From sequence record NC_028945.1: a stretch of 64,000 nucleotides of DNA. One strand, written 5' to 3'. The position numbers were made by a program, and so were the translations under genes. Below the pieces are notes generated by a model. The model was not told where the DNA came from and searched no databases. It was given only the letters and a program-made list of their open reading frames with translations. Positions 11,137 through 61,517 of the stretch are shown piece after piece; position 1 is the first letter of the stretch; the number at the start of each line of letters is the position of its first letter.

Positions 11137-11226
11137 ATAATTTGAAAATTCCCTGTTGACATCAGCGGGGAATTTTTCTATTTTCAAAACATAAGAGAGA
11201 AACAGAAAAACAGAGAGGTTCTTCCG
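11137..11226 (+). promoter_or_regulatory. conserved early promoter/leader cassette
   Basis: TTGAC(11156)-N18-TATTTT; AATTCCC...GGGAATT repeat around -35. Confidence 0.8.
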
Positions 11227-11478
11227 ATGAACGTAGCACGAGTTTACCGCAATGCTGTTGTTGTCCTGAAGCCGTCGAAGGCCCGCATGGCTCGCGTCAT
11301 GGCTGAAGGTGCCGCGCTTCATGCGCAAGCGAAGAAGATCGTCGCCGAACAGCTTGCGACCGGCAGAACCGCCCGCGAACTCTATGACGCCGCCTGTGCC
11401 GTGCGAACCGAGTTCGACAGCAAGCTTGAACGCGAAATCCGCGTCACCCTTCTTGGTCTTGTTCGCAAGTCCGCTTAA
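11227..11478 (+). CDS. hypothetical basic protein
   Basis: after cassette RBS. Confidence 0.7.
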   Translation: MNVARVYRNAVVVLKPSKARMARVMAEGAALHAQAKKIVAEQLATGRTARELYDAACAVRTEFDSKLEREIRVTLLGLVRKSA

Positions 11479-11506
11479 CCAATTTTCGAAACGAAGGAAT
11501 AATTCG

Positions 11507-11713: not shown

Positions 11714-12147
11714 GCAAACCGCGCACTGTCGCCACTCTCAACGACTCGGCATCGGTCATCTTCCGTGTTGAGACCAATTATCCCGGCTCAACGCCGGATG
11801 GTTTCGGCACATATGCGGCATATGCCTTCATCCACAATTCGTCCGTGGATGAACTGAACAATCGGGTTGCGTCTCGAAAGCATATGGCAATCTGGACTCA
11901 TCGTGAAATGTTCCGTGACAACATGATAACAGAGCCGGGATTGTATGATGGTTACGTTACGGAAACGATGGATTTCCAAATTCCAGAAGATGCTTTCCGC
12001 GTGGCTCGATTCATACAAAACGAATGCCAATTGATGTGCGGTTATGAACACGGGACCGAATGGGAAAAGAATCATCGCGGTCCGATCAAAACCCGTGTCG
12101 TCATGATATCGTCCCGCAAAACCATTCACGAAGTTGTAGAGGCATGA
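11710..12147 (+). CDS. hypothetical protein
   Basis: ATGA coupling. Confidence 0.65.
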   Translation: MSKPRTVATLNDSASVIFRVETNYPGSTPDGFGTYAAYAFIHNSSVDELNNRVASRKHMAIWTHREMFRDNMITEPGLYDGYVTETMDFQIPEDAFRVARFIQNECQLMCGYEHGTEWEKNHRGPIKTRVVMISSRKTIHEVVEA

Positions 12148-12311
12148 CAATGATGACCCTTCTTCCTGTTGTCGTCGCGACCATCGCATGTTGGTTCGCC
12201 GGTTACTTTTGCGGGATACACCGCGAACGGGTGGTTTGGAACCAACTGATCAAGGAAGGCAAGCTTCCGAAGCCGGGACAAGCTCACCAATGGGGAAGAA
12301 ACGCCAGATAA
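12144..12311 (+). CDS. small membrane protein
   Basis: ATGA coupling; N-terminal TM. Confidence 0.6.
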   Translation: MTMMTLLPVVVATIACWFAGYFCGIHRERVVWNQLIKEGKLPKPGQAHQWGRNAR

Positions 12312-12314
12312 GGC

Positions 12315-12450
12315 GAGACCCCGGTCGCGGGCGAGTGAGGGGACACTTCAGGGGCGCGACCGAGGTCTCTAAGCAGGGGCAAGCTTGCGGCGGTTCGTCC
12401 CTGCTTCATTCCGGTCTACGCGCGTGTTCTGATTCGGTCAACCAACCGGC
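12315..12450 (+). ncRNA. candidate structured non-coding RNA (three stem-loops)
   Basis: GC-rich intergenic tract; 15-bp stem 12315-12329/12355-12369, 9-bp stem 12371-12379/12398-12406, CCGGT/ACCGG stem 12411-12449. Confidence 0.5.
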
Positions 12451-12477
12451 GACTTTATCCACAAGCAAAATAATTCG

Positions 12478-12562
12478 AAATAATTTGAAATTCCTATTGA
12501 CGGCGGTCTTCGGATCGCCTAATTTGTTTTCAGAAAGAGTTTTCAACAAAGAGGTTCTTCTG
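12478..12562 (+). promoter_or_regulatory. conserved early promoter cassette; spacer is a cUUCGg hairpin
   Basis: TTGAC(12497)-GGCGGTC TTCG GATCGCC-TAATTT. Confidence 0.8.
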
Positions 12563-13351
12563 ATGAATACCGCTGCTGCTGACAAAAAGATGACTGTTCT
12601 CGTGTATTGCATAACCGGCGCGAAGAACGCCATGTACACGATCCGCACGCAGCGCGTCATTCCCGGCATGATGATCGCCTGTAACGATCACTACGTTTGT
12701 AACGTCGCCGCGACCGAAGAGAAAGCCGAAGAGAAGGCACTTGCCTATTGTGCCCGCATGCAAGAGCGCATGGGCGATAGCGTCGTTGTCGAGTACATCG
12801 GCTTTGATGGTGGCGACATCATCAAGCGGCGCGGCAAGCTGTCGGCATACGACACGCAAGCCATCGAAGACATCGAAGCCGGTGAATTCCCGTTCGGCAA
12901 GCACAAGGGCGAAAGGATCGTTGATGCTCCGGACGGCTATATCACGTGGCTTGCCGATCAGATGAACAACCCCGCGCTGAAGCCGGTTATGGCGGCACTC
13001 GCTGCCGTTGCCTACGGTGTCGCGATTGAACGCGGTCTGTTCGCCAAGCGGGAAGCCCGCAAGCTTGAACTTCAGGAAATGGAAGCCAAATCCAACTTCG
13101 TCGGCACCATCGGCGAACGCCGGGAATTCGAAGGCGAATTGATTTCGGTCTTCGGGATCAAGAACGATCCGTCTGACATGGGCGTTGCCTATTACGTCAA
13201 CAAGATCAAGATGGGTGATGACATCATTGTTTACGCCGGGAACAAGCTTGGCGAACGTGGTGACACCCTGAAGATCAAGGCGACGATCAAGGCTCACAAG
13301 GAATACAAGGGCGCGAAAACCACGAAGGTTAACCGCCCGAAGGTACTGTGA
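12563..13351 (+). CDS. DUF3820/ExoX-C-like domain fused to an OB-fold-like domain
   Basis: FPFGKHKG.....PDGYITWL motif; C-terminal FVG..GER.E...K.....KATIK.H.EY.G.K.T...RP. Confidence 0.7.
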   Translation: MNTAAADKKMTVLVYCITGAKNAMYTIRTQRVIPGMMIACNDHYVCNVAATEEKAEEKALAYCARMQERMGDSVVVEYIGFDGGDIIKRRGKLSAYDTQAIEDIEAGEFPFGKHKGERIVDAPDGYITWLADQMNNPALKPVMAALAAVAYGVAIERGLFAKREARKLELQEMEAKSNFVGTIGERREFEGELISVFGIKNDPSDMGVAYYVNKIKMGDDIIVYAGNKLGERGDTLKIKATIKAHKEYKGAKTTKVNRPKVL

Positions 13352-16600: not shown

Positions 16601-16635
16601 TCGGGCAATAGAGAAATCTTGACGAAATCAGATTC

Positions 16636-16665
16636 CCGCTGGTCCTTGGATTGGCGGGCTTTTTC
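16636..16665 (+). terminator. rho-independent terminator
   Basis: CCCGC(T)...(G)GCGGG followed by T-tract. Confidence 0.6.
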
Positions 16666-16680
16666 GTGGCTGATAAATAG

Positions 16681-16790
16681 CTTCAGGGAACCTTGAAGGG
16701 GAAGAGCGAATCAGGTAACAGATGCCTTCGGCATTCGCTTCGCTCATTGTAACCGGATTCTAACGGGAATGGAATCCGACTCCCCGAATC
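16681..16790. ncRNA. candidate structured RNA or origin-associated element
   Basis: several stems (16681-16698; 16708-16720/16748-16760; GAGCGAA/TTCGCTC) between convergent TAAATA(+,16674) and TTGACA-N16-TATAAT(-,16859..16832). Confidence 0.4.
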
Positions 16791-16931
16791 ACCAGTAACA
16801 ATCTTAATATATTTCATACAGGACATTCCTGATTATACAGAGTTTTTCAAACCTGTCAAGCATTATTTCATTTTATTCACAAAAATCTGATCGCATTTTA
16901 AGTTTTTAAATTTTTTAAATTCGTTGAAAAA

Positions 16932-16979
16932 CCACCAAATATGGCGTGTCGGTCGCATTCGATCCACTAAATATCCACA
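16932..16979 (+). promoter_or_regulatory. tandem NrdR-box-like motifs upstream of nrdJ
   Basis: CCACCAAATATGGCGT (16932) and CCACTAAATATCCACA (16964), 32 bp apart. Confidence 0.4.
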
Positions 16980-16997
16980 CGTCCTCAAAATTAATAA

Positions 16998-17026
16998 TTG
17001 ATATCGAATGCCAAATCTCCTATACT
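16998..17026 (+). promoter_or_regulatory. sigma70 promoter upstream of nrdJ
   Basis: TTGATA-N17-TATACT. Confidence 0.7.
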
Positions 17027-17035
17027 GTCATACAC

Positions 17036-17095
17036 AAGCCGGGAATGCGGGATCACTGAATGTGATGACCCTTCATAGCATCCCGGCTTCTTTTT
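17036..17095 (+). terminator. long hairpin plus U-tract in nrdJ leader (attenuator or sRNA)
   Basis: AAGCCGGGA/TCCCGGCTT outer stem, inner ATCAC/GTGAT stem, then T-tract. Confidence 0.6.
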
Positions 17096-17247
17096 GCGAC
17101 CTGTCTACGGTCCACACTATCCCTTAATCATGAACCTATCGACTCCGCTTCGGCTCATTTCCCGTGATCCGAACTCGTAAACCTGTCTTTTCAATTTTCA
17201 AAACCGGAGAACAAAATCCGGAATAATAATTAGAGGTTCCTAATTAA

Positions 17248-33415: not shown

Positions 33416-33489
33416 TTGTCAAGAATTGGTTGACTGGAATTTGTTTTGATTATATGTTTCTCTCATTAGGTTCAAATGGAGAAACAAAC

Positions 33490-33699
33490 ATGACACACAA
33501 ATGGTTTATGACCGGAACACTCTACGCACCGTCGCATGAGGATGTCGGTCACTATTCGTTGAAATATGCCAACGGTCGCCCGCATGTGATTCGTGGTGAC
33601 ACCATCACCTTCCTTTCCCGCAATCCAGTTCAGCCCGGACAGGCAGAATTCATCATTCGCGATGACGATGTGATTATCAATGGAGACGATTATGGTTGA
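33490..33699 (+). CDS. hypothetical protein
   Basis: promoter TTGAC(33430)-N18-TATGTT; RBS GGAG. Confidence 0.6.
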   Translation: MTHKWFMTGTLYAPSHEDVGHYSLKYANGRPHVIRGDTITFLSRNPVQPGQAEFIIRDDDVIINGDDYG

Positions 33700-33865
33700 A
33701 AAACTTGACGAACGCGTTCTACAATTCGCATTAAGGCTTGAAACCATCGACCGAATTCTGTCTGGTTGGGCACACGGAAAATACCGTGAAGGCGTTTCGC
33801 TGGAAATGCTCAATCTCAAACTCACCAAAGCCCGTGAATTATCAGAGGAAATCATCAACCAATGA
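33680..33865 (+). CDS. hypothetical protein
   Basis: coupled ORF. Confidence 0.55.
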   Translation: METIMVEKLDERVLQFALRLETIDRILSGWAHGKYREGVSLEMLNLKLTKARELSEEIINQ

Positions 33866-34206
33866 GCGAATCAACCTACATTGGCACCTTCCTGATGGAA
33901 CTGGACGAAACCCCATTCGAGCAATTCACGCCAGCCGATTGGGCGATGTATTTCATTCAGCGATACGGACAGTTCGACGGACCCCATCACAAGGCATGGG
34001 TTTTGGATCAGGTCGCCCGAATCTTGAAGGGAACTCCGGTCATCATCAGCCAAGCCCGATGGACCGACCACGATCCGGAATGGCGCATTTATACCGCGAC
34101 CGATCCTTCCGACGAATACAAGGTCTGGCGTCGGCTGATGCTTGGTGATTGGGATGAAGACACCCAAGAATTCGAATATGGCTATGACGAAGGAATCGCC
34201 CCGTAA
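33862..34206 (+). CDS. conserved phage hypothetical protein
   Basis: DG.HHK.WVLDQVARIL...Y.YDEGIAP family pattern. Confidence 0.75.
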   Translation: MSESTYIGTFLMELDETPFEQFTPADWAMYFIQRYGQFDGPHHKAWVLDQVARILKGTPVIISQARWTDHDPEWRIYTATDPSDEYKVWRRLMLGDWDEDTQEFEYGYDEGIAP

Positions 34207-34210
34207 AAAT

Positions 34211-34270
34211 TCGAAATAATTTGAAATTGCCTCTTGACGCGAATTCGTTTTCATTATAAGTTTTAATCAT
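34211..34270 (+). promoter_or_regulatory. conserved early promoter cassette
   Basis: TTGAC(34234)-N18-TAAGTT. Confidence 0.78.
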
Positions 34271-34331
34271 GAAAAGAAAATGAGTTCGCGGCATTCCGCC
34301 AGCGACCATCGCGCTAGGAGGCGCTTTCCCC

Positions 34332-34541
34332 ATGCTTTCTGTTCGTGAGCAAATCATCCGCCGTCACTTCGCCGCGAAGACGCTTCGTGCGCTGAAGAAG
34401 AAAGGCATCGAAGTGATGTCCACGACGTTCATTCCGGACGCTTCCGGCGACTACACGCGCGGCGAAACCGCCTATAACATCAACGACAACGATACCGGTC
34501 GTGTGATGACTTTCCTTGAAGTTCTGGCGCTCGCACAATGA
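34332..34541 (+). CDS. hypothetical protein
   Basis: RBS GGAGG. Confidence 0.7.
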   Translation: MLSVREQIIRRHFAAKTLRALKKKGIEVMSTTFIPDASGDYTRGETAYNINDNDTGRVMTFLEVLALAQ

Positions 34542-34744
34542 GCGCCATATCTTTTGAAGAAGCCAAGCGCCACGCGCATGATCTTTGGACCACGGCACAC
34601 GTTCCAATGAATGGGAAATGGTCGTCGCCATATGGTACAATCCAAACGGTCGAACATGGCGAGTGGGAAGCAAAATTGAACAGCGGATGGACCGTCCGGT
34701 TGAGTAGCCACGGTTCGATTATCGGAGGAAGCTATGAACCGTAA
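34538..34744 (+). CDS. hypothetical protein
   Basis: ATGA coupling. Confidence 0.6.
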   Translation: MSAISFEEAKRHAHDLWTTAHVPMNGKWSSPYGTIQTVEHGEWEAKLNSGWTVRLSSHGSIIGGSYEP

Positions 34745-35093
34745 GGAAATGATTGAAGCGATCTGTGAGGTTTCGTCACTCGAATTCCAAACGGAAATCG
34801 GTCACTTCATGGGAATTGACGAGCGAGAATATGACTATGATCAGGTGTCGGCTCTATTCGACGCCATGAACATGGAAGGACAGACGCGCCATGTCGTCAC
34901 AATCGCCCGATCCCTGTTGATCCAATTCGGGTTCTATCGCCCGATGCCTCAAGATGAAATTGAAAACACCTATGTGTCTGGTGGTCGCGTCCCGTGGTTT
35001 TTTAAATTGAACGGAATTCGCTACACGTCCGACGAAACCGACGAAGAATGGTTTGATCCGGCATTTGATCCGGAAAACAGAAAGGAAGATTGA
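34734..35093 (+). CDS. hypothetical protein
   Basis: RBS GGAGG. Confidence 0.65.
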   Translation: MNRKEMIEAICEVSSLEFQTEIGHFMGIDEREYDYDQVSALFDAMNMEGQTRHVVTIARSLLIQFGFYRPMPQDEIENTYVSGGRVPWFFKLNGIRYTSDETDEEWFDPAFDPENRKED

Positions 35094-35094
35094 C

Positions 35095-35565
35095 ATGAAC
35101 AAGATTTTTTCAATTGAACTGTGGCAGTACGACTATCCGGGCGACAATGCCAGACGACGGGATTGGTTTCCGTACGACAACGAACTGATACTGGTGTGTG
35201 CGACACAAGAGCAAATAGACGCTTGGTTGAATGAGCGCTTCGCCGAAATCGTCGCACACAAGATCAGCGAATATGAAGAGAAGATCGCGGATATTGAAGC
35301 CCATATCGAACGCGACATGGAGCGACTCGACGCGATCAATAGCATGAACGATGCTATGCTGGCGACGTTGGGCATCATGAAGCCCAATCCTTCGCTCATC
35401 CCCAATCAGCAAGAAGAAATCAACGTGCTTCGTCTGAGGATTGAAGCACTCGAAACGTCCAGCCTTCAGGACATCATCGACCGTGGTTTGATCGACCGTC
35501 GATGGGTTGCCGATAAGGTCGAAGTCAAAACGCTCGCTGGAATCGACACAGAAAAGTTCAAATAA
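35095..35565 (+). CDS. hypothetical coiled-coil protein
   Basis: RBS AAGGA; ATG 35095. Confidence 0.65.
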   Translation: MNKIFSIELWQYDYPGDNARRRDWFPYDNELILVCATQEQIDAWLNERFAEIVAHKISEYEEKIADIEAHIERDMERLDAINSMNDAMLATLGIMKPNPSLIPNQQEEINVLRLRIEALETSSLQDIIDRGLIDRRWVADKVEVKTLAGIDTEKFK

Positions 35566-35641
35566 TTTCATTTTCCCTATTGACTGGAATCATAACTTGA
35601 TCTAATTTCAAATCATAGAGAGAACGAAAGAGAGACAACGC
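35560..35641 (+). promoter_or_regulatory. conserved early promoter/leader cassette
   Basis: TTGAC(35580)-N18-TAATTT; CATAGAGAGAACGAAAGAGAG. Confidence 0.8.
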
Positions 35642-35992
35642 ATGTACAGCAAAGAGCAACTGTCCGAAGTCATGAAAGCCGCATGGGCGTTCTATCGCGC
35701 CCGTCGCGAAGGCTATGGCGTTCGGCAGATTGCCGCGCGTCCTGCCGAGTTCTCGTTTGCGACCGCACTCAAGACCGCGTGGCGGAAGTTCAAAACCGCC
35801 GCCGCCAACCAAGCCCGCTTCGACGCTCTTCCCGAAGATCAGAAGAAAGTTGTTGCCGCGCTGATCCAAGCCTACGAAGATGCGGTTTACCTTCCGGCTC
35901 ACATGAGCATGAGTCGTCGCCGTGAAGAAATCAGCCAGAAGATTAACCAGATGTGCGGTTTCTACCTTGACGAGTTCCGTCCGAAGATGTGA
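35642..35992 (+). CDS. hypothetical protein
   Basis: IM..AW...R.....F..ALK.AW...K family pattern. Confidence 0.7.
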   Translation: MYSKEQLSEVMKAAWAFYRARREGYGVRQIAARPAEFSFATALKTAWRKFKTAAANQARFDALPEDQKKVVAALIQAYEDAVYLPAHMSMSRRREEISQKINQMCGFYLDEFRPKM

Positions 35993-36005
35993 AAGAGGTA
36001 TTGTG

Positions 36006-36206
36006 ATGACACCTGAACAGATTGAAATCGGTTCCGCCTACGCCAAGGGAGACAAGGTTCGCCGCGTCGTTAGCTATGGCGCGGGTCGCGAATGGGTCGT
36101 GTGGGGTGACGAACGTGAGCGCCTTCCGCTTGGCGGCTTCGTTCGAACCAAATGTACCAGCGCAAAGTCCTTCGCCAAGTGGGCAGAAAGAAAGGTAGAA
36201 AAATGA
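36006..36206 (+). CDS. hypothetical protein
   Basis: RBS GAGG. Confidence 0.6.
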   Translation: MTPEQIEIGSAYAKGDKVRRVVSYGAGREWVVWGDERERLPLGGFVRTKCTSAKSFAKWAERKVEK

Positions 36207-36331
36207 TCGACAAAGACACTGAAGAGAGAATCGAGACCAAAGAGAAGTTCGTGCCGTTGCTGACTGCCGAACAGAAGCGCAAGCTCGCCGAGCAAACCCG
36301 CAAGACAGAAGAGAAGGAAGCAAAGAAGTGA
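36203..36331 (+). CDS. 42-aa charged peptide
   Basis: ATGA/GTGA coupling on both sides. Confidence 0.5.
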   Translation: MIDKDTEERIETKEKFVPLLTAEQKRKLAEQTRKTEEKEAKK

Positions 36332-36525
36332 AAACGAAAGTTGGAACCATCGACATGACACCGACATGGGAAGCGATCCTTCCTGCCTTGATTGTCGCCG
36401 TCGAGAACGGCACCGCTCTTGGACGGAAGATCGCGACCGAAGAGCTTCGGCGGATGGCAAAGCTTGCCGACATGTACGCTGCCGATGTGAAGGCAAAGGA
36501 CATGCCATGCGACACGAAGAATTAG
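36328..36525 (+). CDS. hypothetical protein
   Basis: TID.TPTW..ILP family pattern. Confidence 0.65.
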   Translation: MKTKVGTIDMTPTWEAILPALIVAVENGTALGRKIATEELRRMAKLADMYAADVKAKDMPCDTKN

Positions 36526-36770
36526 CCGCTAAGACCCATAGGACCAAGACCGGCGCACGCTTCTACAAAGCCTTCTATTGGCGTGGTGAGTGGTGTCGGT
36601 TGACCGGACTCTTCGGTAAGGTCAATGGCTTAACCGTCGCACAAGCGATGGGCAAGGAACAAGGCTTTACATGGACCGACGAAAATGGTGATATGCTCCG
36701 CGAGGGGACACCGATCCGCAACCTTTGGCAGGAGATTGTTCCCGGCGTGACAACCGTCCCGTGGGGGTGA
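36507..36770 (+). CDS. hypothetical protein
   Basis: RBS AAGGA. Confidence 0.55.
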   Translation: MRHEELAAKTHRTKTGARFYKAFYWRGEWCRLTGLFGKVNGLTVAQAMGKEQGFTWTDENGDMLREGTPIRNLWQEIVPGVTTVPWG

Positions 36771-36773
36771 TTA

Positions 36774-36863
36774 ATGTCGAGGGACTTAACCAAAGGCATC
36801 ATGCTCGCGACCGCTATTACCGGTCTGACATATGGGGCCTTATATTTTATTTTTCTGATGTGA
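36774..36863 (+). CDS. 29-aa membrane peptide
   Basis: RBS GGGGG; single TM. Confidence 0.4.
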   Translation: MSRDLTKGIMLATAITGLTYGALYFIFLM

Positions 36864-36894
36864 CGAGGAACATATAAACGAGGGAGTTTTTATC

Positions 36895-37107
36895 ATGAAT
36901 ACAGGTGTAGCACTTTTAGCCAAGATCGCCGGAAGAGACGTCCTTCTTGATGCCCTATGGCGTTGGGTCGATGACAGACAGACAGAGAAGATGGAAGAGG
37001 AAGCCTCTGTCGGCGCGGAAGATTGTGCGGCAGCACGTGTGTCAGGATATCTAACCGCGTTGGATGACGTCCTTACCAAAATCGAAGAACTTCAAACTTC
37101 CACATAA
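36895..37107 (+). CDS. hypothetical protein
   Basis: RBS GGGAG. Confidence 0.65.
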   Translation: MNTGVALLAKIAGRDVLLDALWRWVDDRQTEKMEEEASVGAEDCAAARVSGYLTALDDVLTKIEELQTST

Positions 37108-37113
37108 AACTTC

Positions 37114-37190
37114 GAATAATTTCAAATTTTCGGTTGACCATAATTTGGTTTTATTCTATCTTTTAATCAGAGATAGAAAGGAACTGAGTC
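37114..37190 (+). promoter_or_regulatory. conserved early promoter/leader cassette
   Basis: TTGAC(37134)-N18-TATCTT. Confidence 0.8.
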
Positions 37191-37406
37191 ATGGTCACCG
37201 AAGAGCGCTTTGAACGTTTCCTCAATTCCCGCTTCACGCGTCGTGTGAAGATTGACGAAAAGCTTGAAGCCCGTGCCGAACAGATGATCGGCGAACTGTG
37301 CCGCGACGGTTGCCCCGTCTATTACGTCATGCCCGCTGGTGGTCGTTACCGCGAAGGCGCGCGTGTCGAACTGGTCGATTTCCTGATCCGTAACAACTAC
37401 GTTTGA
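37191..37406 (+). CDS. hypothetical protein (paralog of 37694..37951)
   Basis: shared AE..(I/V)GELCR.G...YY...LIRNNYV. Confidence 0.75.
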   Translation: MVTEERFERFLNSRFTRRVKIDEKLEARAEQMIGELCRDGCPVYYVMPAGGRYREGARVELVDFLIRNNYV

Positions 37407-37420
37407 AGGGACATTTCATC

Positions 37421-37618
37421 ATGAACAAGCGATTGGAAATTTCCGTCGAATTCACCGACAGCATTTATTTCGTTCCCGCCCGCTACGTCCAGCGCTGGTG
37501 GAAGGGTGAGTATACCACCACACTGGAACCGGCTCCGATTGACGGTTACATGTTCCTTCAGGAACCGAACCACGATCAATGGGTGGCGATCCGAAATTCT
37601 CAAGAAAATTTGGAATAA
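37421..37618 (+). CDS. hypothetical protein
   Basis: RBS AAGGG. Confidence 0.55.
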   Translation: MNKRLEISVEFTDSIYFVPARYVQRWWKGEYTTTLEPAPIDGYMFLQEPNHDQWVAIRNSQENLE

Positions 37619-37693
37619 TTTCAAATTCGGTGTTGACAGGAATTCGTTTTGGTTCTATCTTTTAATCATAGAGAGAACGAAAGAGAGACGAAA
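37614..37693 (+). promoter_or_regulatory. conserved early promoter/leader cassette
   Basis: TTGAC(37633)-N18-TATCTT. Confidence 0.8.
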
Positions 37694-50465: not shown

Positions 50466-50549
50466 TTCGAAACACTCTTCGTTTCTCTCTATAATTTAAA
50501 ACTATAGGAAATTCGAAGAGTGGTCAAGTGGAATATTTGGAATTATTTC
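50466..50549 (-). promoter_or_regulatory. conserved early promoter/leader cassette
   Basis: TTGAC(50527)-N18-TAGTTT. Confidence 0.8.
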
Positions 50550-50752
50550 GACATCGCCCAGCCGGTCAATATGCCGTCGATGTAATCTTGCGAGACGAAA
50601 TATTCGTTGATCCTGAAACGATAGTCGCCCGTGTCGAAATCGACTTGACAGGACGCGACGTGTTCGCCGTAGCTATATTCGGCATATCCGTCTTCTTCAC
50701 CATTGGCGTATGTGAGAAGGTTGTGGGATGTAAGACCGGCTTTGTACTTCAT
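50543..50752 (-). CDS. hypothetical protein
   Basis: RBS AAAGGA. Confidence 0.6.
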   Translation of the reverse strand: MKYKAGLTSHNLLTYANGEEDGYAEYSYGEHVASCQVDFDTGDYRFRINEYFVSQDYIDGILTGWAMSK

Positions 50753-50767
50753 GTTGTAATCCTTTCG

Positions 50768-51169
50768 TCAAATTTTCTTCATCAGATAATCGATGAACTT
50801 CGAGTCGGTAATCGGTTCAAAACCAAACCCTGCGACATAGTGCCATTCGTTAGTATCCGGTGTGTAGACAACGTCACCCTTGCTCATGGAGCGCGGGAAG
50901 TCCGTGTGACACGTCGTCATCATGTCGAACCGCCATTCGCTGTTCATCCGGTCGTACAGTTCGTCCTTGTCGTCGCAATCCTTGACGAGCGCTGCCATTT
51001 CAAACGTGTCGTGCTTGATCGCCCCTTCGTACTTCGGTTCCCGTTCGCCGCGCGGCTCACTGTCGAGATAGGCGATGCCAGCTTCAGAACCGGACCAGCA
51101 CCCAACCGCGTGGAGTTGGTCGATCTGCGCGTCACTCATGCGGCGATAGAAAACAATAAAAGCGGACAT
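50768..51169 (-). CDS. hypothetical protein (YodL-like RSMS.GDV motif)
   Basis: RSMSKGDVV...W.YVA.FGF. Confidence 0.65.
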   Translation of the reverse strand: MSAFIVFYRRMSDAQIDQLHAVGCWSGSEAGIAYLDSEPRGEREPKYEGAIKHDTFEMAALVKDCDDKDELYDRMNSEWRFDMMTTCHTDFPRSMSKGDVVYTPDTNEWHYVAGFGFEPITDSKFIDYLMKKI

Positions 51170-51183
51170 TGTCGAAACCTTTC

Positions 51184-51384
51184 TTAGGCGACACGGTACA
51201 TGTCAGAAGCTTCTTGGAACGACTTCGCTTTGCGACGAAGCTTGGCGTAGAGAAGCGCGTCTTTCTTGGTGGAGAAGTTCTGAATTTCAGCGCCGGGACC
51301 GGCAACTTGCCAACGCAACGGAGCATCATGCCAGTCGCCATCATGGATTTCGCGTGCGAGCTTCGAAACAACGATCTTGGTCAT
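51184..51384 (-). CDS. hypothetical protein
   Basis: first ORF after cassette. Confidence 0.7.
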   Translation of the reverse strand: MTKIVVSKLAREIHDGDWHDAPLRWQVAGPGAEIQNFSTKKDALLYAKLRRKAKSFQEASDMYRVA

Positions 51385-51475
51385 TTGGAGAACCTTTCTC
51401 TCTTGTGTCTCTCTATAATTCAAACTTAAAGACAAACCCGATTCCAGTCAAGCGGTAATTTGAAATAATTTCAAA
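51385..51475 (-). promoter_or_regulatory. conserved early promoter/leader cassette
   Basis: TTGAC(51451)-N18-TAAGTT. Confidence 0.8.
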
Positions 51476-51477
51476 TT

Positions 51478-51957
51478 TCAGAACGGGATTTCGTCGTCGC
51501 CGTAGTCCTTCGCGAGGGTCTGGCGATAGGCTTCTTCGCGTTCCTTCCGGTAGGTGGCGACTTCAGCGCGGGCTTGTTCGGTCGCGCCGCCGAGTTCGAC
51601 GCCGTCATACAATTCCCATTCATCGGAGTTCAGGCACTTGATGGCTTCTTCAAGCGTGTCGAACGAGTTGGCGACGTACTTGCGGGTGGTTCCGCGATCT
51701 TCATCGACACTCATCACGAGAACTTGGAACGGCTTGTCGAGGCTGATCGACGGCTTGTCGAAGAAGAGTTCTTGAAGCGAACAGCCGGTGACGCTCACTT
51801 TGGCAACACCGTCGAAGCTCACGGCATAGGAAGAGCCGAAGTCTGGCGTTTCGCCGACGTAGTAGACAGCGAACTTGCGGGCGGCTTTGACGGTCTTGTA
51901 TGACTTGGCTTTGTAGAAGCCGTCGATGGTGGAAACGGAAACAGTGATCTTGGTCAT
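51478..51957 (-). CDS. hypothetical protein with acidic DEIPF tail
   Basis: first ORF after cassette; ends GDDEIPF (SSB-C-terminus-like). Confidence 0.7.
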   Translation of the reverse strand: MTKITVSVSTIDGFYKAKSYKTVKAARKFAVYYVGETPDFGSSYAVSFDGVAKVSVTGCSLQELFFDKPSISLDKPFQVLVMSVDEDRGTTRKYVANSFDTLEEAIKCLNSDEWELYDGVELGGATEQARAEVATYRKEREEAYRQTLAKDYGDDEIPF

Positions 51958-52045
51958 CTGAAGGTCTTTCTTCGTTTCTCTCTATAATTAGAAATTAGAC
52001 GAGATTCGGAGAAAGGTCAACAGGGAATTTGAAATTAAACGAAAT
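51958..52045 (-). promoter_or_regulatory. conserved early promoter/leader cassette
   Basis: TTGAC(52020)-N18-TAATTT. Confidence 0.8.
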
Positions 52046-52413
52046 TATTTCAGGTCGAATGTCTCGGTTGCCATACCGCCGCGACCATTGGGTGTCCAGT
52101 ACCAGCAGTGTTTGCCGCTCCGGGTGATGAACGCTTCTACGTCGTCATGGCGCATGTAGCTAATCGTATGCGACGTTTTGCGCTGGCGAGGAAGCGAGAA
52201 CCCTTGTTCGGATAGCAGCTTGTGCCCGATCACGAACGGGTGGTCTTCGATGTCCTTCAGATATTCGTCCTTGACGATCTTGCGTGGTGGTCCATTACCG
52301 AATCCAGTCTTCAGGCACGAGGATGCCTGAAGATAGGTGTCCATGTGAATGTTCTTCGGCAGGTTGCCGGTGATGTGGGCATAAGCCAATGCGGTCTTCA
52401 GACTGTTCCTCAT
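52045..52413 (-). CDS. hypothetical protein
   Basis: RBS AAAGGA. Confidence 0.6.
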   Translation of the reverse strand: MRNSLKTALAYAHITGNLPKNIHMDTYLQASSCLKTGFGNGPPRKIVKDEYLKDIEDHPFVIGHKLLSEQGFSLPRQRKTSHTISYMRHDDVEAFITRSGKHCWYWTPNGRGGMATETFDLK

Positions 52414-52414
52414 A

Positions 52415-52690
52415 TCAGTAAATTCCTTTCTTCAGGCTGATTCTGATTGGCTTGTCGGTTTCGACGCGGTCGGCTTTGTTCCGCTCACATTTCGCGACAA
52501 AGTCTTTGCCTTCTTCGACCCAACGGTCAAGCGACATTTGGTTGAGGTAGCAGCAGTACACGGAATGCGTCTCGTAGAATTTGGCGGGAACATCGTCATA
52601 GACGAAGTACCAGTAGCCGTCGCCACGGGCAAGATCGAGCTTGTCGCACTTGATTTTCGACAGGACTTGCTTTGCGGTCTTCGCGTACAT
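52415..52690 (-). CDS. hypothetical protein
   Basis: L.L.RG.GY.YF.YDD...SV....LN...L..W pattern. Confidence 0.65.
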   Translation of the reverse strand: MYAKTAKQVLSKIKCDKLDLARGDGYWYFVYDDVPAKFYETHSVYCCYLNQMSLDRWVEEGKDFVAKCERNKADRVETDKPIRISLKKGIY

Positions 52691-52691
52691 G

Positions 52692-52916
52692 TCAATATCC
52701 CTTCTGGACCTTTTCCCGCTTCCATACATTCCATGCAAATTGCGGCTTCTTGAAAGAGCCGAACTTGTACCGCGTGTACTTGGCATCAAAGCCTTGTGCC
52801 TTCAGTTCTTCGACGGCGGCTTCGGCTTCGGCTTCGTTCTTGGGCGCGGGAAACAGGAAGACTCTTTCGAAAGGGTTCTTCGGCATGTTGGCGACAACTC
52901 TGTTCGGCTTGGACAT
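52692..52916 (-). CDS. hypothetical protein
   Basis: first ORF after cassette. Confidence 0.65.
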   Translation of the reverse strand: MSKPNRVVANMPKNPFERVFLFPAPKNEAEAEAAVEELKAQGFDAKYTRYKFGSFKKPQFAWNVWKREKVQKGY

Positions 52917-53003
52917 TTCGAAGAACCTTTCTTTTCTCTCTATGTTTAGAGAATAGGAAAATTCCCCGCTGGTGTCAACGGGGAATTCGAAATTATTTGA
53001 AAT
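52917..53003 (-). promoter_or_regulatory. conserved early promoter cassette with -35 inside a 9-bp inverted repeat
   Basis: AATTCCCCG-TTGACACCAG-CGGGGAATT; -10 TATTCT. Confidence 0.82.
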
Positions 53004-53005
53004 TT

Positions 53006-53731
53006 TCAATCATCGTAATCGTCAAAGGCGTCGTGTCGTTCTTCCCGCTTGTACTTGCCGATGATCGTTTTTTCGCCAAGATATTGTGTGCGTTCGTACC
53101 AGCCGACTTTGAGATATTCCTCATACTGTTCATCAGTCAGACGCAAGCCGAGATTGAGCGTGTCGCCATTACCGGGGACATAATAGATCGGATCGCGGTC
53201 GGAATAATAATCCCGTTCCGGAATGATCAACACATCGGGATTGTCCTTCTCATTCTGAACGATATCCCGGATGCGGTAATAGCGGTCGAGATACGAGTCA
53301 CGGATCATACGGTTGATGTATTTGCCGTTGATATCGCAGAACGTGTAATCCGCATAGCAATAGCCGATCACTTCGACATCGTCCGGCAGTTCTTGCCCGA
53401 ATTCGAGGTTCGGCGGCGGGTACTTGTCGTCATACCAGTCGTGTTTGCCTTCCCGGATCGAGTCGATTTGCGAACGGGACATCGGCAGGAAATTTGCCTT
53501 GTATTTGTCTTTCGACTTCTGGTGATGTGGCATGATGAATTCATAATGCTTGATGTCGTCGGGAGACTTCACCTTCTTGTATTCGTCCGCCTTCATCACA
53601 TGGGTGTAGATTTCGTCCTGCCCGACATTGCGCCAGTAGACGAGCACGAATTCATCCGTTCCCGGAATGGCGACAGAGACCGCTTCGACGTTGATGACGA
53701 TGGTCTTGGTAAGCTTCTTGACGTCGGTCAT
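53006..53731 (-). CDS. hypothetical protein (Tyr/Asp-rich)
   Basis: RBS AAAGGA; ATG 53731. Confidence 0.7.
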   Translation of the reverse strand: MTDVKKLTKTIVINVEAVSVAIPGTDEFVLVYWRNVGQDEIYTHVMKADEYKKVKSPDDIKHYEFIMPHHQKSKDKYKANFLPMSRSQIDSIREGKHDWYDDKYPPPNLEFGQELPDDVEVIGYCYADYTFCDINGKYINRMIRDSYLDRYYRIRDIVQNEKDNPDVLIIPERDYYSDRDPIYYVPGNGDTLNLGLRLTDEQYEEYLKVGWYERTQYLGEKTIIGKYKREERHDAFDDYDD

Positions 53732-53742
53732 TGGTCGTCCTT

Positions 53743-54081
53743 TCAGAGAGTGTGCATGACGATGTGGGCGTTCATCGCATCGGATCGGCAATGATAGGCA
53801 TCCGGGAGATTTTCCTTCAGCCATTCTGCGATCATGTCATAATCGACAAGAACACTGGTGGCATGCCAGAACATAATCAGCTTTTCCTTGACCTTGACGA
53901 ACATGACCGAAATGCAAATCGGTCGGTCCATCAACTGCCCGACAGTGACCAGAAAGCCATGTTCCTGTTTCCACGAATAGCCGTGCTTCTCATGCCACGT
54001 TTGCCAGATGTACATTTCTTCGTTGCTGTTCGCTTCGATCATCCCGTGGACATCGGCAAGCATTTCTTCCAATGAACGCAT
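53743..54081 (-). CDS. conserved phage hypothetical protein
   Basis: EA.S.E...W...G...T.G....RP..(I)S...F...TS..VD..M...WL. Confidence 0.7.
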   Translation of the reverse strand: MRSLEEMLADVHGMIEANSNEEMYIWQTWHEKHGYSWKQEHGFLVTVGQLMDRPICISVMFVKVKEKLIMFWHATSVLVDYDMIAEWLKENLPDAYHCRSDAMNAHIVMHTL

Positions 54082-54083
54082 TC

Positions 54084-54794
54084 TCACTTTCCTTCTTTTT
54101 CGTCAGCGACGGTCTGTGCCGCACCCATGATCACTTGGAACGGAACCTTCTTACCAGCGAGGAACCAATCGATCCGAACCCAAGTGGTTCCGTGGAAGTT
54201 CCGGCAGTAGACCGGATTGATCGAAACCGGAAGCTTCATGTCTTCGGCGGTAGGGACTTCCTTGTTGAATTCTTCGATGATCCGCTTCGACCAGTCGAAG
54301 GTTTCTTTCCGGTCCTTCAGCCACTCTTCGAAGCTCTTCAGGACACGGTCCTTGATGGCTTCTTCAGCACCGGCTTCTTTTCTTTCGAATTTGACGACTT
54401 CGACTGCCTTGACTTCAAGGCGAAGGGCGAAAAGGTCTTCGATGGTGGTGAAGGTTTCAGCGAGCGCTTCGGTGCCGACGACGGCTTCGACAGCGGCTCT
54501 ATGCTTAGCGCGGTAGTTGTGAAGGTCGAAGGGGAAGCCGTAGTAGGCTTGGTTGGCGTGGTCGAAGCGACTGCCTTTTTTTGCGTAGGTTTCGCAACCG
54601 GTGTTGTTGTCGATGACAGCGCGACCGGCGTCACGCTCTTCACGCATCACGGCAAGCAAGGCGTCTTTGACGAGACGTTCAAGAACGTCGAATGCGCGTG
54701 CAAGGTCTTCGTTGGCTTCTTTGATCTTCGCTTTGATTGCCGAACCGGCATTGACGATGGCAACGGCTTTGGCGGTGTAATCACGAGCACTCAT
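54084..54794 (-). CDS. hypothetical protein
   Basis: first ORF after cassette. Confidence 0.75.
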   Translation of the reverse strand: MSARDYTAKAVAIVNAGSAIKAKIKEANEDLARAFDVLERLVKDALLAVMREERDAGRAVIDNNTGCETYAKKGSRFDHANQAYYGFPFDLHNYRAKHRAAVEAVVGTEALAETFTTIEDLFALRLEVKAVEVVKFERKEAGAEEAIKDRVLKSFEEWLKDRKETFDWSKRIIEEFNKEVPTAEDMKLPVSINPVYCRNFHGTTWVRIDWFLAGKKVPFQVIMGAAQTVADEKEGK

Positions 54795-54880
54795 TGAAGA
54801 ACCTTTCTTCGTTTCTCTCTATGATTTGAAGATAGAGTAGATTCGAAGAAAGGTCAACAGGGAATTTGGAATTATTTCGA
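54795..54880 (-). promoter_or_regulatory. conserved early promoter/leader cassette
   Basis: TTGAC(54857)-N18-TATCTT. Confidence 0.8.
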
Positions 54881-55043
54881 ATTTTTGATCAGGGTGACGA
54901 TCAGACTTTCGCCATTCTCGTGATGGTCGATATGAACCTCATCCACACCAAGAGCATCGCGCATGAATTCCTCAAGATCGGCAACCGAAACCATTCCCTT
55001 ACGACAATGGTTTCGGTTGCGCTGATATGCGTGTACATGTCCT

Positions 55044-55646
55044 TCATTCGGTGATCCCTTTCAATGACTCGTGAAGCTGCCGAAGCCATTCATTACGAGC
55101 GGCAACCCGTTCAACTTCTTCGTTGCGATAACGCGTGTAGCGCTTGATGTCGTCCTGAAGGTCTTCGATTTCGTAGGCAAGCCATCGTTCGGCTGTCCAG
55201 ACGGTCGGCACATCGTCTGAAGGATCGCGGTGGCAATCAAATTCGATAGAACTGTTCAACTGTTGAAGCATGAATTCTTTGATTCCTTCCGGAGCACCTT
55301 GCCAAGCTTCGACCTTGGCAATCATGTCTTTGTAACGCTTCTTGGTCCGCTTGTAGGTATCGACACGCTTGTTGTGATATTCGAGCGCGTCGGCATTTGC
55401 CTTTGCGACAAGGGCTTCAATCGTTTCCGGTGTCGCTTCCCGGAGCATTTCGATACGTTCGGCGGCGTCGATGATTCTTTCGTTATAATGCTCAACATCG
55501 GGTTCGAACTGTTCCGGAACGGGAGCATCAGCCGGATCGTCGCGCATGCAGATCAGCGCGCCCATACCACGGGCACATGAAAGGACAAAGTCGCGAAGGC
55601 TGGTGATTTCACCTTCAGCGACGGCATGTGTATAACCAGTAGGCAT
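55044..55646 (-). CDS. conserved phage hypothetical protein
   Basis: MPTGYT..(I)..G...F...CAR..GA...RDDP family pattern. Confidence 0.8.
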   Translation of the reverse strand: MPTGYTHAVAEGEITSLRDFVLSCARGMGALICMRDDPADAPVPEQFEPDVEHYNERIIDAAERIEMLREATPETIEALVAKANADALEYHNKRVDTYKRTKKRYKDMIAKVEAWQGAPEGIKEFMLQQLNSSIEFDCHRDPSDDVPTVWTAERWLAYEIEDLQDDIKRYTRYRNEEVERVAARNEWLRQLHESLKGITE

Positions 55647-55649
55647 TGA

Positions 55650-55805
55650 TTACTTTCTTTCTAATTTGACGTAGGTTTCGAGGGTTTGAATGTAGCGGAC
55701 GACTTCTTCCAAGGCGTATACGTCGCGAGCGCGTTCGAATTCCTTGTAGGGAACTTTGGGGTCGAGGGTCCGGATCAGTTCGGAGACTTCAAAGGGTCGT
55801 TTCAT
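55650..55805 (-). CDS. hypothetical protein (51 aa)
   Basis: ATGA coupling; below track cutoff. Confidence 0.5.
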   Translation of the reverse strand: MKRPFEVSELIRTLDPKVPYKEFERARDVYALEEVVRYIQTLETYVKLERK

Positions 55806-56733: not shown

Positions 56734-56755
56734 TATTCAATTCTCCAATCTATCA

Positions 56756-61516: not shown

Positions 61517-61517
61517 A

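What the first reader, a model, noticed from the sequence alone, without database searches (positions are those of the whole stretch)
12315..12463. Unexplained GC-rich, multi-hairpin intergenic element (candidate phage ncRNA or processing site)
Seen: about 150 nt without a credible gene, far more GC-rich than other intergenic spacers. Stem 1: GAGACCCCGGTCGCG/CGCGACCGAGGTCTC (15 bp, one mismatch) capped by an inner GAGTG/CACTT hairpin with an AGGGGA loop. Stem 2: AAGCAGGGG/TCCCTGCTT. Stem 3: closed by CCGGT/ACCGG. A perfect TTATCCACA (DnaA-box sequence) follows at 12455-12463, then an AT-rich UP element and a promoter whose spacer is a UUCG hairpin. I cannot match it to tRNA, tmRNA, SRP, a known ribozyme or a riboswitch. 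Inference: a stable sRNA cut from the early transcript, an RNase III site, or a protein-sequestering decoy RNA.
Basis: partly seen in the sequence, partly recalled or inferred. Interest (0 to 1): 0.7.

Follow-up and report, generated by a model that had tools for sequence, protein, structure and literature searches.

The report
Orphan GC-rich hairpin insert, phage phiN3
A roughly 160-base GC-rich piece of DNA that folds into two very stable hairpins was inserted, only in the phiM12/phiN3 group of Sinorhizobium phages, between a small membrane-protein gene and an ordinary T4-type promoter/stem-loop cassette; it is real and conserved, but its function (probably an RNA 3'-end or processing structure) is unproven.

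Summary
The window is Sinorhizobium phage phiN3 (T4 superfamily, Emdodecavirus). The stretch 12312-12463 is 64% GC, against about 35% in other spacers. Hairpin 1 (12315-12369) and hairpin 2 (12371-12406) are significant, and hairpin 1 is the most stable 60-nt window on the + strand of the whole 64 kb. The claimed "stem 3" is not supported. The DnaA 9-mer is no more than chance gives. The "UP element plus promoter with UUCG hairpin" is one of at least 20 PeSL-type promoter/stem-loop cassettes, a known kind.

New finding: relatives carry the same gp291-like gene, cassette and gp292, but no GC element. The element is therefore a single-copy insertion of about 160 nt (12304-12466), specific to this lineage. 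It has no homologue in phage, plasmid, viral-contig or Rfam searches.

It diverges 2-2.6% between phiN3 and phiM12, against 6.5-9.5% at third codon positions. That is modest evidence of constraint. There are no compensatory changes and no RNA data.

Best guess (0.35): a cis-acting structured 3'-UTR element of the gp288-291 early transcript, serving as an exonuclease barrier or RNase III-type site. Main rival (0.3): functionless inserted DNA.

The parts
11156..11184 (+). Upstream early promoter cassette (TTGACA, 17-nt spacer, TATTTT). It would transcribe gp288-gp291 and the element.
   Evidence: No terminator-like site on the + strand between it and 12502.
12144..12311 (+). gp291, a 55-aa small membrane protein. 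Its last two codons and its stop lie in the inserted block.
   Evidence: Annotation. Alignment with the small TM ORFs of relatives L018, L009 and L012.
12304..12466 (.). Lineage-specific inserted block of about 158-163 nt, defined against relative L018. In L018, TGGGGACGGGACG is followed after 4-5 nt by the AT-rich cassette.
   Evidence: Single copy in the four Emdodecavirus genomes and nowhere else.
12315..12369 (+). Hairpin 1: a 15-bp lower stem (one C.A mismatch in phiN3; a one-base bulge instead in phiM12), an internal loop, and a 5-bp upper stem.
   Evidence: z = -4.1; rank 1 of 21,314 windows.
12371..12406 (+). Hairpin 2: a 10-bp stem including G12379.U12398, plus an inner 4-bp stem. It is separated from hairpin 1 by the single base U12370. 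Its tail UUCAUUCC is not a canonical U-tract.
   Evidence: z = -3.35. Not listed as terminator-like.
12407..12463 (+). It carries two of the four phiN3/phiM12 differences (12430 and 12450).
   Evidence: (z = +1.09).
12455..12463 (+). TTATCCACA (DnaA-box 9-mer) at the right end of the insert. Present, but not beyond chance.
12467..12496 (+). AT-rich UP-like part of the PeSL-type cassette (AAAATAATTCGAAATAATTTGAAATTCCTA).
12497..12525 (+). Sigma-70-type promoter of gp292: TTGACG, 17-nt spacer, TAATTT.
   Evidence: (13 strict family matches against 0.27 expected).
12502..12531 (+). Cassette stem-loop GGCGGUC-UUCG-GAUCGCC (with a G.U pair on the + strand) followed by UAAUUUGUUUUC. It is terminator/attenuator-like for RNA arriving from upstream. 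The cassette core that contains it (TTGACG...TTTT, 34 nt from 12497) is identical in relative L018.
   Evidence: (z = -2.3).
12550..13351 (+). Shine-Dalgarno AGAGG (12550-12554) and gp292 (12563-13351), a DUF3820/QSregVF_b protein.

Best explanation
The GC-rich stretch is a block of about 160 nt (12304-12466), of unknown origin. It was inserted in the ancestor of the phiM12/phiN3 group, just where the small membrane-protein gene gp291 used to end inside the AT-rich part of the next promoter/stem-loop (PeSL-type) cassette.

The early promoter at 11156 transcribes it as the 3' untranslated end of the gp288-gp291 message. That message would be attenuated or terminated about 130 nt further on, at the cassette's own UUCG stem-loop plus U-rich tail.

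In that RNA, the two adjacent and very stable hairpins most likely act in cis. They would block 3'-to-5' exonucleases, or serve as a double-stranded processing site of the RNase III type. Either way they would fix and stabilise the 3' end of the upstream message and separate it from the gp292 unit.

- **Shown:** the insertion, its single-copy and lineage-restricted status, the hairpins, the cassette, and the reduced divergence.
- **Inferred:** that it is transcribed as a 3'-UTR, and the stabiliser or processing role.
For: **Stability of the hairpins**
- Hairpins 1 and 2 are strong outliers.
- Hairpin 1 is the most stable 60-nt window of the 64 kb.

**Strand and transcription**
- All genes here are on the + strand.
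- Promoter 11156 lies upstream, and no terminator-like site occurs before 12502.
- G.U pairs (G12379.U12398 and others in hairpin 2; G12506.U12515 in the cassette stem-loop) work only on the + strand RNA.

**Constraint**
- phiN3 and phiM12/M7/M19 differ by 3 substitutions and 1 indel in 152 nt.
- Third codon positions differ by 6.5% in gp292 and 9.5% pooled. This gives P = 0.0002-0.03.
- Two of the four changes switch a mismatch or wobble to a Watson-Crick pair in predicted pairs: C12321.A12363 to C-G, and G12413.U12430 to G-C.
- The indel only moves the defect within stem 1.

**Context in relatives and in the literature**
- The orthologous position in relative L009 holds a canonical intrinsic terminator. 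An RNA 3'-end function at this spot is therefore plausible.
- PeSL stem-loops are reported to terminate or attenuate upstream transcription (PMC2839356).
- A soil relative (run X14) keeps the element at about 95% identity.
Against: - There is no transcript evidence. No RNA-seq run holds the phage.
- There is no covariation. Only two distinct sequences could be read, and there are no double compensatory changes.
- Relatives L018, L012, L019, L013 and L009 do without the element. It is therefore dispensable for the gp291-cassette-gp292 arrangement.
- The whole-element fold is only a marginal outlier (z = -1.8).
- One third of the insert (12407-12463) is unstructured.
- Low divergence could partly reflect a recently exchanged block. 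gp292 is itself less diverged than gp290.
- A stabiliser would seem redundant with the cassette stem-loop that already follows.
Confidence: 0.35

Rival explanations
1. Functionless passenger DNA. A fragment of foreign GC-rich DNA, for example host or another rhizobial element carrying terminator-like palindromes, was captured by illegitimate or cassette-mediated recombination next to a PeSL-type cassette. It has simply not yet decayed.
For: - The element is restricted to one shallow lineage and absent from all five more distant relatives with the same cassette and gp292.
- It is an orphan with no homologue anywhere searched.
- Its GC content of 64% resembles S. meliloti DNA (about 62-63%, my own knowledge) more than the phage (49.5%).
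- PeSL cassettes are known hot spots of insertion and replacement (PMC2839356, PMC4122927).
- The 57-nt right part is unstructured.
- There are no compensatory changes.
Against: - Divergence is 3-4 times lower than at third codon positions of the flanking genes (P = 0.0002-0.03).
- The changes that did occur spare or improve the predicted pairs.
- It has the most extreme local folding energy in 64 kb.
- It is retained at about 95% identity in a soil relative.
- No source sequence was found in 72,556 plasmids, including rhizobial megaplasmids. A 20-mer scan of 185,579 species genomes gave only a chance hit inside a Mesorhizobium gene.
Confidence: 0.3
2. A trans-acting small RNA or protein decoy. 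It would be cut from the 3' end of the gp288-291 transcript: hairpins 1 and 2, the unstructured linker as seed, the A/U-rich stretch, and the UUCG stem-loop with U tail as its terminator.
For: - The layout over 12315-12531 resembles 3'-UTR-derived, Hfq-type sRNAs (my own knowledge). It has a structured 5' domain, an unstructured 57-nt segment (z = +1.09), an A/U-rich region, and a terminator-like hairpin with a U-rich tail.
- Divergence is reduced.
Against: - There is no promoter of its own inside or just upstream.
- The A/U-rich stretch, hairpin and U tail are features of every cassette of the family, so they are not evidence for an sRNA.
- Two of the four substitutions fall in the putative seed.
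- No transcript data exist, no Rfam family matches, and no target was tested.
Confidence: 0.12
3. A cis-acting regulator of read-through. It would be a put-like processive antiterminator or a riboswitch-like sensor. In that case the two hairpins, separated by one unpaired base, modify RNA polymerase or compete with the cassette stem-loop, so that upstream transcription continues into gp292 and beyond.
For: - Two stem-loops are separated by a single unpaired nucleotide (U12370). They lie downstream of an early promoter and about 95-130 nt upstream of a terminator-like stem-loop.
- HK022 put RNAs are about 70 nt, consist of two stem-loops with one base at the bifurcation, and act on downstream terminators (PMC9378689).
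Against: - The resemblance is in outline only. The core here is 92 nt, not about 70.
- No sequence comparison with put was possible.
- No alternative antiterminator pairing with the cassette stem-loop was found by inspection.
- Relatives with the identical cassette stem-loop (L018) have no such element.
- Only one such element exists, against at least 20 cassettes.
Confidence: 0.08
4. A DNA-level site. The perfect DnaA box beside an AT-rich stretch would mark an origin, a DnaA-titrating site or a DnaA-regulated promoter. Alternatively, the palindromes would be protein-binding or cruciform sites.
For: - A perfect TTATCCACA lies at 12455-12463. It is conserved in phiM12/M7/M19 and sits about 73 nt upstream of the presumed start site of the gp292 promoter.
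Against: - A single box is expected by chance in 25% of shuffled windows.
- Near-boxes are not enriched or clustered here (10 against 11 expected).
- The AT-rich stretch is the generic cassette UP region.
- G.U pairs in the stems argue for RNA-level rather than DNA-level palindromes.
- Relatives lack the box.
Confidence: 0.05
5. Unannotated coding sequence. This would be an N-terminal extension of gp292 from GTG 12335, since the gp292 frame is open back to 12188, or a small ORF on either strand.
For: - The gp292 frame has no stop for 125 codons upstream of its ATG.
- The 1-nt indel at 12326 lies upstream of GTG 12335.
Against: - There is no Shine-Dalgarno sequence before GTG 12335.
- The gp292 promoter and start site lie inside the supposed extension.
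- The translation is Arg/Gly/Ser-rich and has no Pfam hit.
- In that frame, 2 of the 3 substitutions are non-synonymous.
- Relatives start gp292 at the aligned ATG, and L009 has an in-frame TAG ten codons upstream.
- The minus-strand 41-aa ORF is broken by the phiM12 indel.
Confidence: 0.03

Closest known systems
PeSL (promoter-early stem-loop) composite promoter/terminator cassettes of T4-type phages (Arbiol et al. 2010, PMC2839356; Comeau et al. 2014, PMC4122927)
   Same: - The right-hand part of the finding (12467-12565) has every sequence feature of a PeSL: an AT-rich upstream region, a sigma-70-like -35 and -10 with a 17-nt spacer, a stem-loop between -35 and -10 containing a G.U pair, then a Shine-Dalgarno sequence and a start codon.
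- It is repeated at least 20 times among small ORFan genes in the window.
- Gene order around it is shuffled in relatives.
   Different: - In a normal PeSL the stop codon of the upstream gene lies in the AT-rich region. This holds in relatives L018 and L009. Here it is displaced 155 nt upstream by the GC-rich insert.
- The GC-rich element is not part of any described PeSL.
- PeSLs were not reported for Sinorhizobium phages in the papers read.
RNase III processing hairpins between early genes of phage T7 and other intercistronic 3'-stabilising hairpins (from my own knowledge)
   Same: - Hairpin 1 is an irregular double-stranded hairpin of about 20 bp: a 15-bp lower stem, an internal loop and a 5-bp upper stem.
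- It lies between cistrons of an early polycistronic transcript and has no U-tract.
   Different: No cleavage or 3'-end data exist. There is only one such site in 64 kb rather than one per cistron. There are two tandem hairpins. The host is an alphaproteobacterium.
HK022 putL/putR antiterminator RNAs (PMC9378689)
   Same: Two stem-loops joined by a single unpaired base. They are transcribed from an early promoter and placed ahead of terminators.
   Different: The core is 92 nt rather than about 70 nt. No sequence similarity was tested. The element is absent from relatives with the same downstream stem-loop. Action on RNA polymerase is untested.
3'-UTR-derived phage or prophage sRNAs, such as DicF, processed from the end of an operon transcript (from my own knowledge)
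   Same: Located at the 3' end of an operon, with structured hairpins followed by a terminator-like stem-loop and a U tail.
   Different: No discrete RNA is known, no target is known, and the terminator is a generic cassette feature.
Small non-autonomous repeats (MITE, REP or RIME-type elements)
   Same: Short, non-coding, palindrome-rich DNA inserted into an intergenic position. The ends form a weak inverted repeat (AGATAAGG and ACTTTATCC, matching at 6 of 8).
   Different: It is single copy in each genome and absent from all other collections searched. It has no clear target-site duplication and no long terminal inverted repeats.

Membership tests
PeSL cassette (applies to 12467-12565 only) | Sigma-70-like -35 and -10 boxes with about 17-nt spacing | tested here: met
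   TTGACG, 17-nt spacer, TAATTT. There are 13 strict family matches against 0.27 expected.
PeSL cassette (applies to 12467-12565 only) | AT-rich region upstream of -35 that normally holds the upstream gene's stop codon | tested here: inconclusive
   The AT-rich region is present. The stop codon lies in it in relatives L018 and L009. In phiN3 the stop is 155 nt upstream because of the insert.
PeSL cassette (applies to 12467-12565 only) | Stable stem-loop within or overlapping the promoter | tested here: met
   GGCGGTC-TTCG-GATCGCC at 12502-12519. Seven of 20 cassettes have z below -2.
PeSL cassette (applies to 12467-12565 only) | Many copies among small ORFan genes of a T4-type phage, associated with shuffled gene order | tested here: met
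   At least 20 copies in 64 kb. Gene order is mosaic in relatives.
PeSL cassette (applies to 12467-12565 only) | Demonstrated promoter and terminator activity | not testable with these tools
   Needs reporter assays, as in PMC2839356.
Intrinsic (Rho-independent) terminator (hairpins 1 and 2) | GC-rich hairpin directly followed by a U-tract | tested here: not met
   The tails are UAAGCAGG and UUCAUUCC. Neither hairpin is listed by the scan, whereas the cassette stem-loop is. True terminators of this phage and its relatives have T6 runs.
Any Rfam 15 family, tRNA or tmRNA | Covariance-model or ARAGORN match | tested here: not met
   No hit at gathering threshold in 64 kb. No hit with E up to 10 inside 12312-12463. 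ARAGORN finds none.
T7-type RNase III site | Irregular hairpin of about 20 bp with an internal loop, lying between cistrons | tested here: met
   The structure of hairpin 1. This is a shape criterion only.
T7-type RNase III site | Cleavage by RNase III | not testable with these tools
   Needs an in vitro cleavage assay or an rnc mutant.
HK022 put RNA | About 70 nt, two stem-loops joined by one unpaired base | tested here: inconclusive
   There are two stem-loops joined by U12370, but the core is 92 nt.
HK022 put RNA | Sequence similarity to putL/putR, and dependence on the RNA polymerase beta-prime zinc-binding domain | not tested
   No put sequence or model was available. The functional test is experimental.
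DnaA-box cluster or origin | Several DnaA boxes clustered next to an unwinding element | tested here: not met
   One perfect box, which 25% of shuffles also give. Near-boxes number 10 against 11 expected, and no second box lies in the spacer.
MITE, REP or RIME-type repeat | Multiple dispersed copies in phage or host replicons | tested here: not met
   One place per Emdodecavirus genome. No hit in PLSDB, including rhizobial plasmids. No structural paralogue. The host chromosome could not be searched by similarity.
Conserved structured ncRNA (generic) | Compensatory base changes across relatives | tested here: inconclusive
   Only two distinct sequences were available. There are one-sided changes only (C.A to C-G, G.U to G-C) and one bulge-forming indel.

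The most novel reading that the evidence does not exclude
The insert is a newly acquired regulatory RNA module. It would be either a put-like cis-acting antiterminator that lets early transcription run through the phage's promoter-embedded stem-loop terminators, or a 3'-UTR-derived sRNA. In either case it shows a T4-type rhizobiophage gaining an RNA regulator by insertion at a PeSL cassette.
Probability: 0.1. Interest if true: 0.65.

Novelty: new member of a known kind. Interest (0 to 1): 0.3.

Why it matters
If the hairpin pair is functional, it would be the first RNA element described for the Emdodecavirus rhizobiophages. It would also be a clean case of a non-coding module gained by insertion at a promoter/stem-loop cassette. 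The ancestral-type junction still exists in relatives, so a precise deletion is an obvious experiment.

More certainly, the analysis shows that these phages use PeSL-type composite promoter/terminator cassettes like those of coliphage RB49/phi1. This extends that shuffling mechanism to an alphaproteobacterial branch of the T4 superfamily.

If the insert is junk, the finding is ordinary. It would be a recent footprint of recombination in a hyperplastic region.

Tried and rejected
- **Known RNA families:** Rfam at gathering threshold on the whole window, Rfam at E up to 10 on 12100-12700, and ARAGORN. Nothing was found in the element.
- **Protein coding:** Pfam on all candidate translations and six-frame reading gave nothing. 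The N-terminal extension of gp292 and the minus-strand 41-aa ORF were rejected.
- **Programmed frameshift or readthrough at the gp291 stop:** by inspection, no slippery heptamer is conserved between phiN3 and phiM12.
- **Homologues of the element:**
  - blastn against 50,697 phage records found only the four Emdodecavirus genomes, with one copy each.
  - PLSDB plasmids gave only chance hits.
  - An IMG/VR 20-mer scan found only phiN3.
  - A JGI metagenome 23-mer scan found none.
  - A gp292-anchored metagenome search found only distant fragments.
  - A 20-mer scan of genome contigs gave one hit, inside a Mesorhizobium gene with no flanking similarity. I judge it chance.
- **Relic of a relative's gene:** blastn, tblastn and Smith-Waterman comparison against the upstream regions of relatives were not above shuffles.
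- **Structural paralogues:** covariance model R1 run on the window plus 10 loci found none.
- **gp291 homologues as a route to more element copies:** only phiM7 was found.
- **RNA-seq:** no RNA run holds the phage.
- **Read laying:** soil relatives carry the element (X14 at about 95% identity, and X6).
- **Outer closing helix (GAUAAGG with ACUUUAUC):** predicted for phiN3 but not for phiM12, so it is not relied on.
- **An earlier insertion boundary (after LPKP, with ACAAGC repeats), drawn from L009:** replaced once L018 showed that the WGRD C-terminus is ancestral.

Full report
**Identity of the window.** The 1.7 kb around the finding is 100% identical to Sinorhizobium phage phiN3, KR052482.1. 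Window position equals record position minus 142,713. phiN3 belongs to Emdodecavirus, the phiM12 group of T4-superfamily phages. All genes near the finding are on the + strand. The finding lies in the 251-nt spacer between gp291 (12144-12311, a 55-aa membrane protein) and gp292 (12563-13351, DUF3820/QSregVF_b).

**Check of the observation**
- The spacer part 12312-12463 is 63.8% GC and the rest (12464-12562) is 35%. The other spacers of at least 50 nt are 25-48% GC.
- Hairpin 1 (12315-12369) folds at -32.2 kcal/mol, z = -4.1, with 0 of 200 shuffles as stable. Hairpin 2 (12371-12406) folds at -19.4 kcal/mol, z = -3.35.
- In a scan of all 60-nt windows of the + strand, 12313-12372 ranks first of 21,314.
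The segment 12407-12463 folds worse than its shuffles (z = +1.09).
- The whole element is only marginal (z = -1.8 on +, -2.4 on -).
- The DnaA 9-mer is present, but a quarter of shuffled windows contain one. One-mismatch boxes are at chance level.
- No Rfam family, tRNA or tmRNA matches.

**The promoter part is a known kind of cassette.**
- The sequence 12467-12565 belongs to a repeat family with at least 20 copies in the window. The family has an AT-rich stretch (AAAATTCGAAATAATTTCAAATTCC), TTGAC, a 17-18-nt spacer, TAnnTT, and a purine-rich leader with a Shine-Dalgarno sequence.
- Seven of 20 copies carry a significant stem-loop overlapping the -35 box or the spacer, followed by the T-rich -10 region.
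- This is the architecture described for PeSLs of T4-type phages. PeSLs are composite early promoter plus stem-loop cassettes whose stem-loops attenuate transcription arriving from upstream. The upstream gene's stop codon normally lies in their AT-rich part, and they mediate modular shuffling (PMC2839356; PMC4122927).
- The "UUCG hairpin in the promoter spacer" (12502-12519, then UAAUUUGUUUUC) is such a stem-loop, and the scan flags it as terminator-like.
- It lies upstream of the presumed start site of its own promoter. It can therefore only act on RNA coming from upstream. By inference, that places the GC-rich element in the 3'-UTR of the transcript started at promoter 11156-11184. No terminator-like site lies in between.

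**The element is an insertion.** I fetched contigs that encode gp292 homologues at 81, 80, 69, 69 and 60% amino-acid identity. All have the cassette directly before gp292, and none has the GC-rich element.
- L018 (69%) is the clearest case. It has a 46-aa gp291-like membrane protein ending ...WGRDDEK*, and the nucleotides TGGGGACGGGACG are shared with phiM12 gp291. Its stop codon lies inside the AT-rich part of a cassette. The core of that cassette, TTGACGGCGGTCTTCGGATCGCCTAATTTGTTTT, is identical to that of phiN3.
- Against L018, phiN3 and phiM12 carry an extra block of about 158-163 nt (12304-12466). This block now also supplies the last two codons and the stop of gp291.
- L012 (80%) has a 26-aa membrane ORF abutting the cassette.
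- L009 (81%) has a canonical intrinsic terminator (AAGCCCGG-TTAAT-CCCGGGCTTTTTT) at that spot.

Parsimony therefore favours a gain in the Emdodecavirus lineage.

**Origin unknown.**
- The block occurs once in each of the four Emdodecavirus genomes and in no other of 50,697 phage records.
- It has no match in 72,556 plasmids, in IMG/VR, or in the rest of the window and the relatives' loci, either by sequence or by a covariance model.
- A 20-mer scan of species-representative genomes gave a single match inside a Mesorhizobium gene without flanking similarity, which is about what chance predicts.
- Its GC content is closer to the host's than to the phage's, but a host origin could not be tested on the chromosome.

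**Evidence on function.**
- phiM12, phiM7 and phiM19 are identical to each other here. They differ from phiN3 by a 1-nt deletion (12326) and three substitutions (12363 A>G, 12430 T>C, 12450 C>T) in 152 nt.
- Third codon positions of flanking genes differ by 6.5% (gp292) to 9.5% (pooled). The probability of so few changes is 0.0002-0.03, depending on the reference and on whether the indel is counted.
- The cassette itself has 0 changes in 99 nt.
- In stem 1, phiN3 has a C.A mismatch where phiM12 has C-G. phiM12 instead has a one-base bulge from the deletion.
- 12430 T>C turns a predicted G.U into G-C, in a weak helix. 12450 is unpaired.
- These changes are compatible with a maintained structure. 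They are one-sided, so they are not covariation.
- G.U pairs make hairpin 2 and the cassette stem-loop better on the + strand RNA than on the complement.
- A soil run holds a 215-nt contig covering 12334-12546 at about 95% identity with a 2-nt deletion at 12348. The positions of its substitutions were not shown.
- No RNA-seq data exist.

**Interpretation.** I commit, with modest confidence (0.35), to a cis-acting RNA role at the 3' end of the gp288-291 early message. The two tandem, very stable hairpins lack U-tracts, so they are not canonical terminators. They would act as an exonuclease barrier or as a double-stranded (RNase III-type) processing site ahead of the cassette stem-loop.

The main rival (0.3) is that the block is recently captured DNA without function. 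It is dispensable in relatives, it is an orphan, one third of it is unstructured, and cassette borders are known recombination hot spots.

Less likely readings:
- a 3'-UTR-derived sRNA or decoy (0.12);
- a put-like or riboswitch-like regulator of read-through (0.08), where the outline matches HK022 put, with two stem-loops joined by one base, but nothing more could be tested;
- a DNA-level DnaA or origin site (0.05);
- coding sequence (0.03).

**Comparison with what is known, and novelty.** The promoter half is a member of the PeSL kind by every sequence criterion that I could test. The GC-rich half belongs to no described family. By shape and position it works most like intercistronic stabiliser or processing hairpins of phage early transcripts. 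I rate it a new member of a known kind, with low-to-moderate interest. It is a real, conserved feature and an unusually clean insertion, but it has no demonstrated function and no feature that would surprise a specialist.

Noticed in passing
window-wide, e.g. 2209, 4366, 11156, 14152, 15145, 19468, 20083, 33430-37633 (+) and 50527-61885 (-): There is a family of at least 20 PeSL-type promoter cassettes: an AT-rich AAATAATTTCAAATTCC stretch, TTGAC, a 17-18-nt spacer, TAnnTT, and a CATAGAGAGAA leader. In 7 of 20, a strong stem-loop pairs the AAATTCCC upstream of -35 with GGGAATTT in the spacer and is followed by a T-rich -10. These look like combined terminator/promoters. The papers I read do not describe them for Sinorhizobium phages.
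   Followed up: partly
window 16601-17247: This 647-nt non-coding region lies upstream of the ribonucleoside-triphosphate reductase gene. It contains an intrinsic terminator (about 16637-16667), a minus-strand sigma-70-like promoter (-35 at 16859), a very AT-rich stretch, two one-mismatch DnaA boxes (16873 and 16971), and a long hairpin with a T-run (about 17038-17090). It has no Rfam hit. It could hold an unannotated RNA, a regulatory region or an origin.
   Followed up: partly
L018:519-553 compared with window 12497-12530: The cassette core, including the UUCG stem-loop, is 34 of 34 nt identical between phiN3 and a soil relative whose gp292 is only 69% identical. The cassette is therefore either under very strong constraint or exchanged independently of its neighbouring genes.
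   Followed up: partly
L009:3339-3375: In an 81% relative, the position of the GC-rich element is occupied by a textbook intrinsic terminator (AAGCCCGG-TTAAT-CCCGGGCTTTTTT). In that relative the gp291 homologue and the RecD-like helicase also sit at different places relative to gp292, so gene order is mosaic.
   Followed up: partly
window 11466-11494: phiM12-type genomes, and contigs in runs X1 and X6, replace about 27 nt here with a 152-nt segment. That segment carries an extra small gene (SmphiM12_376 / PHIM7_289) between gp288 and gp289.
   Followed up: no
L002:2844-3011 (phiM12 KF381361.1, 151163-151330): The gp291 homologue is not annotated in the phiM12 record. Locus tags jump from _378 to _381, although the ORF is intact and is annotated in phiM7 and phiM19.
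   Followed up: no
window 12188-12562: The reading frame of gp292 stays open for 125 codons upstream of its ATG, right through the AT-rich cassette. It is not conserved in relatives and I judge it chance, but it is unusual for an AT-rich promoter region.
   Followed up: yes
window 12261-12269 and 12378-12386: The 9-mer GGCAAGCTT occurs both in the gp291 coding sequence and in the loop region of hairpin 2, 117 nt apart. This is probably chance (my rough estimate is about 0.2 expected).
   Followed up: no
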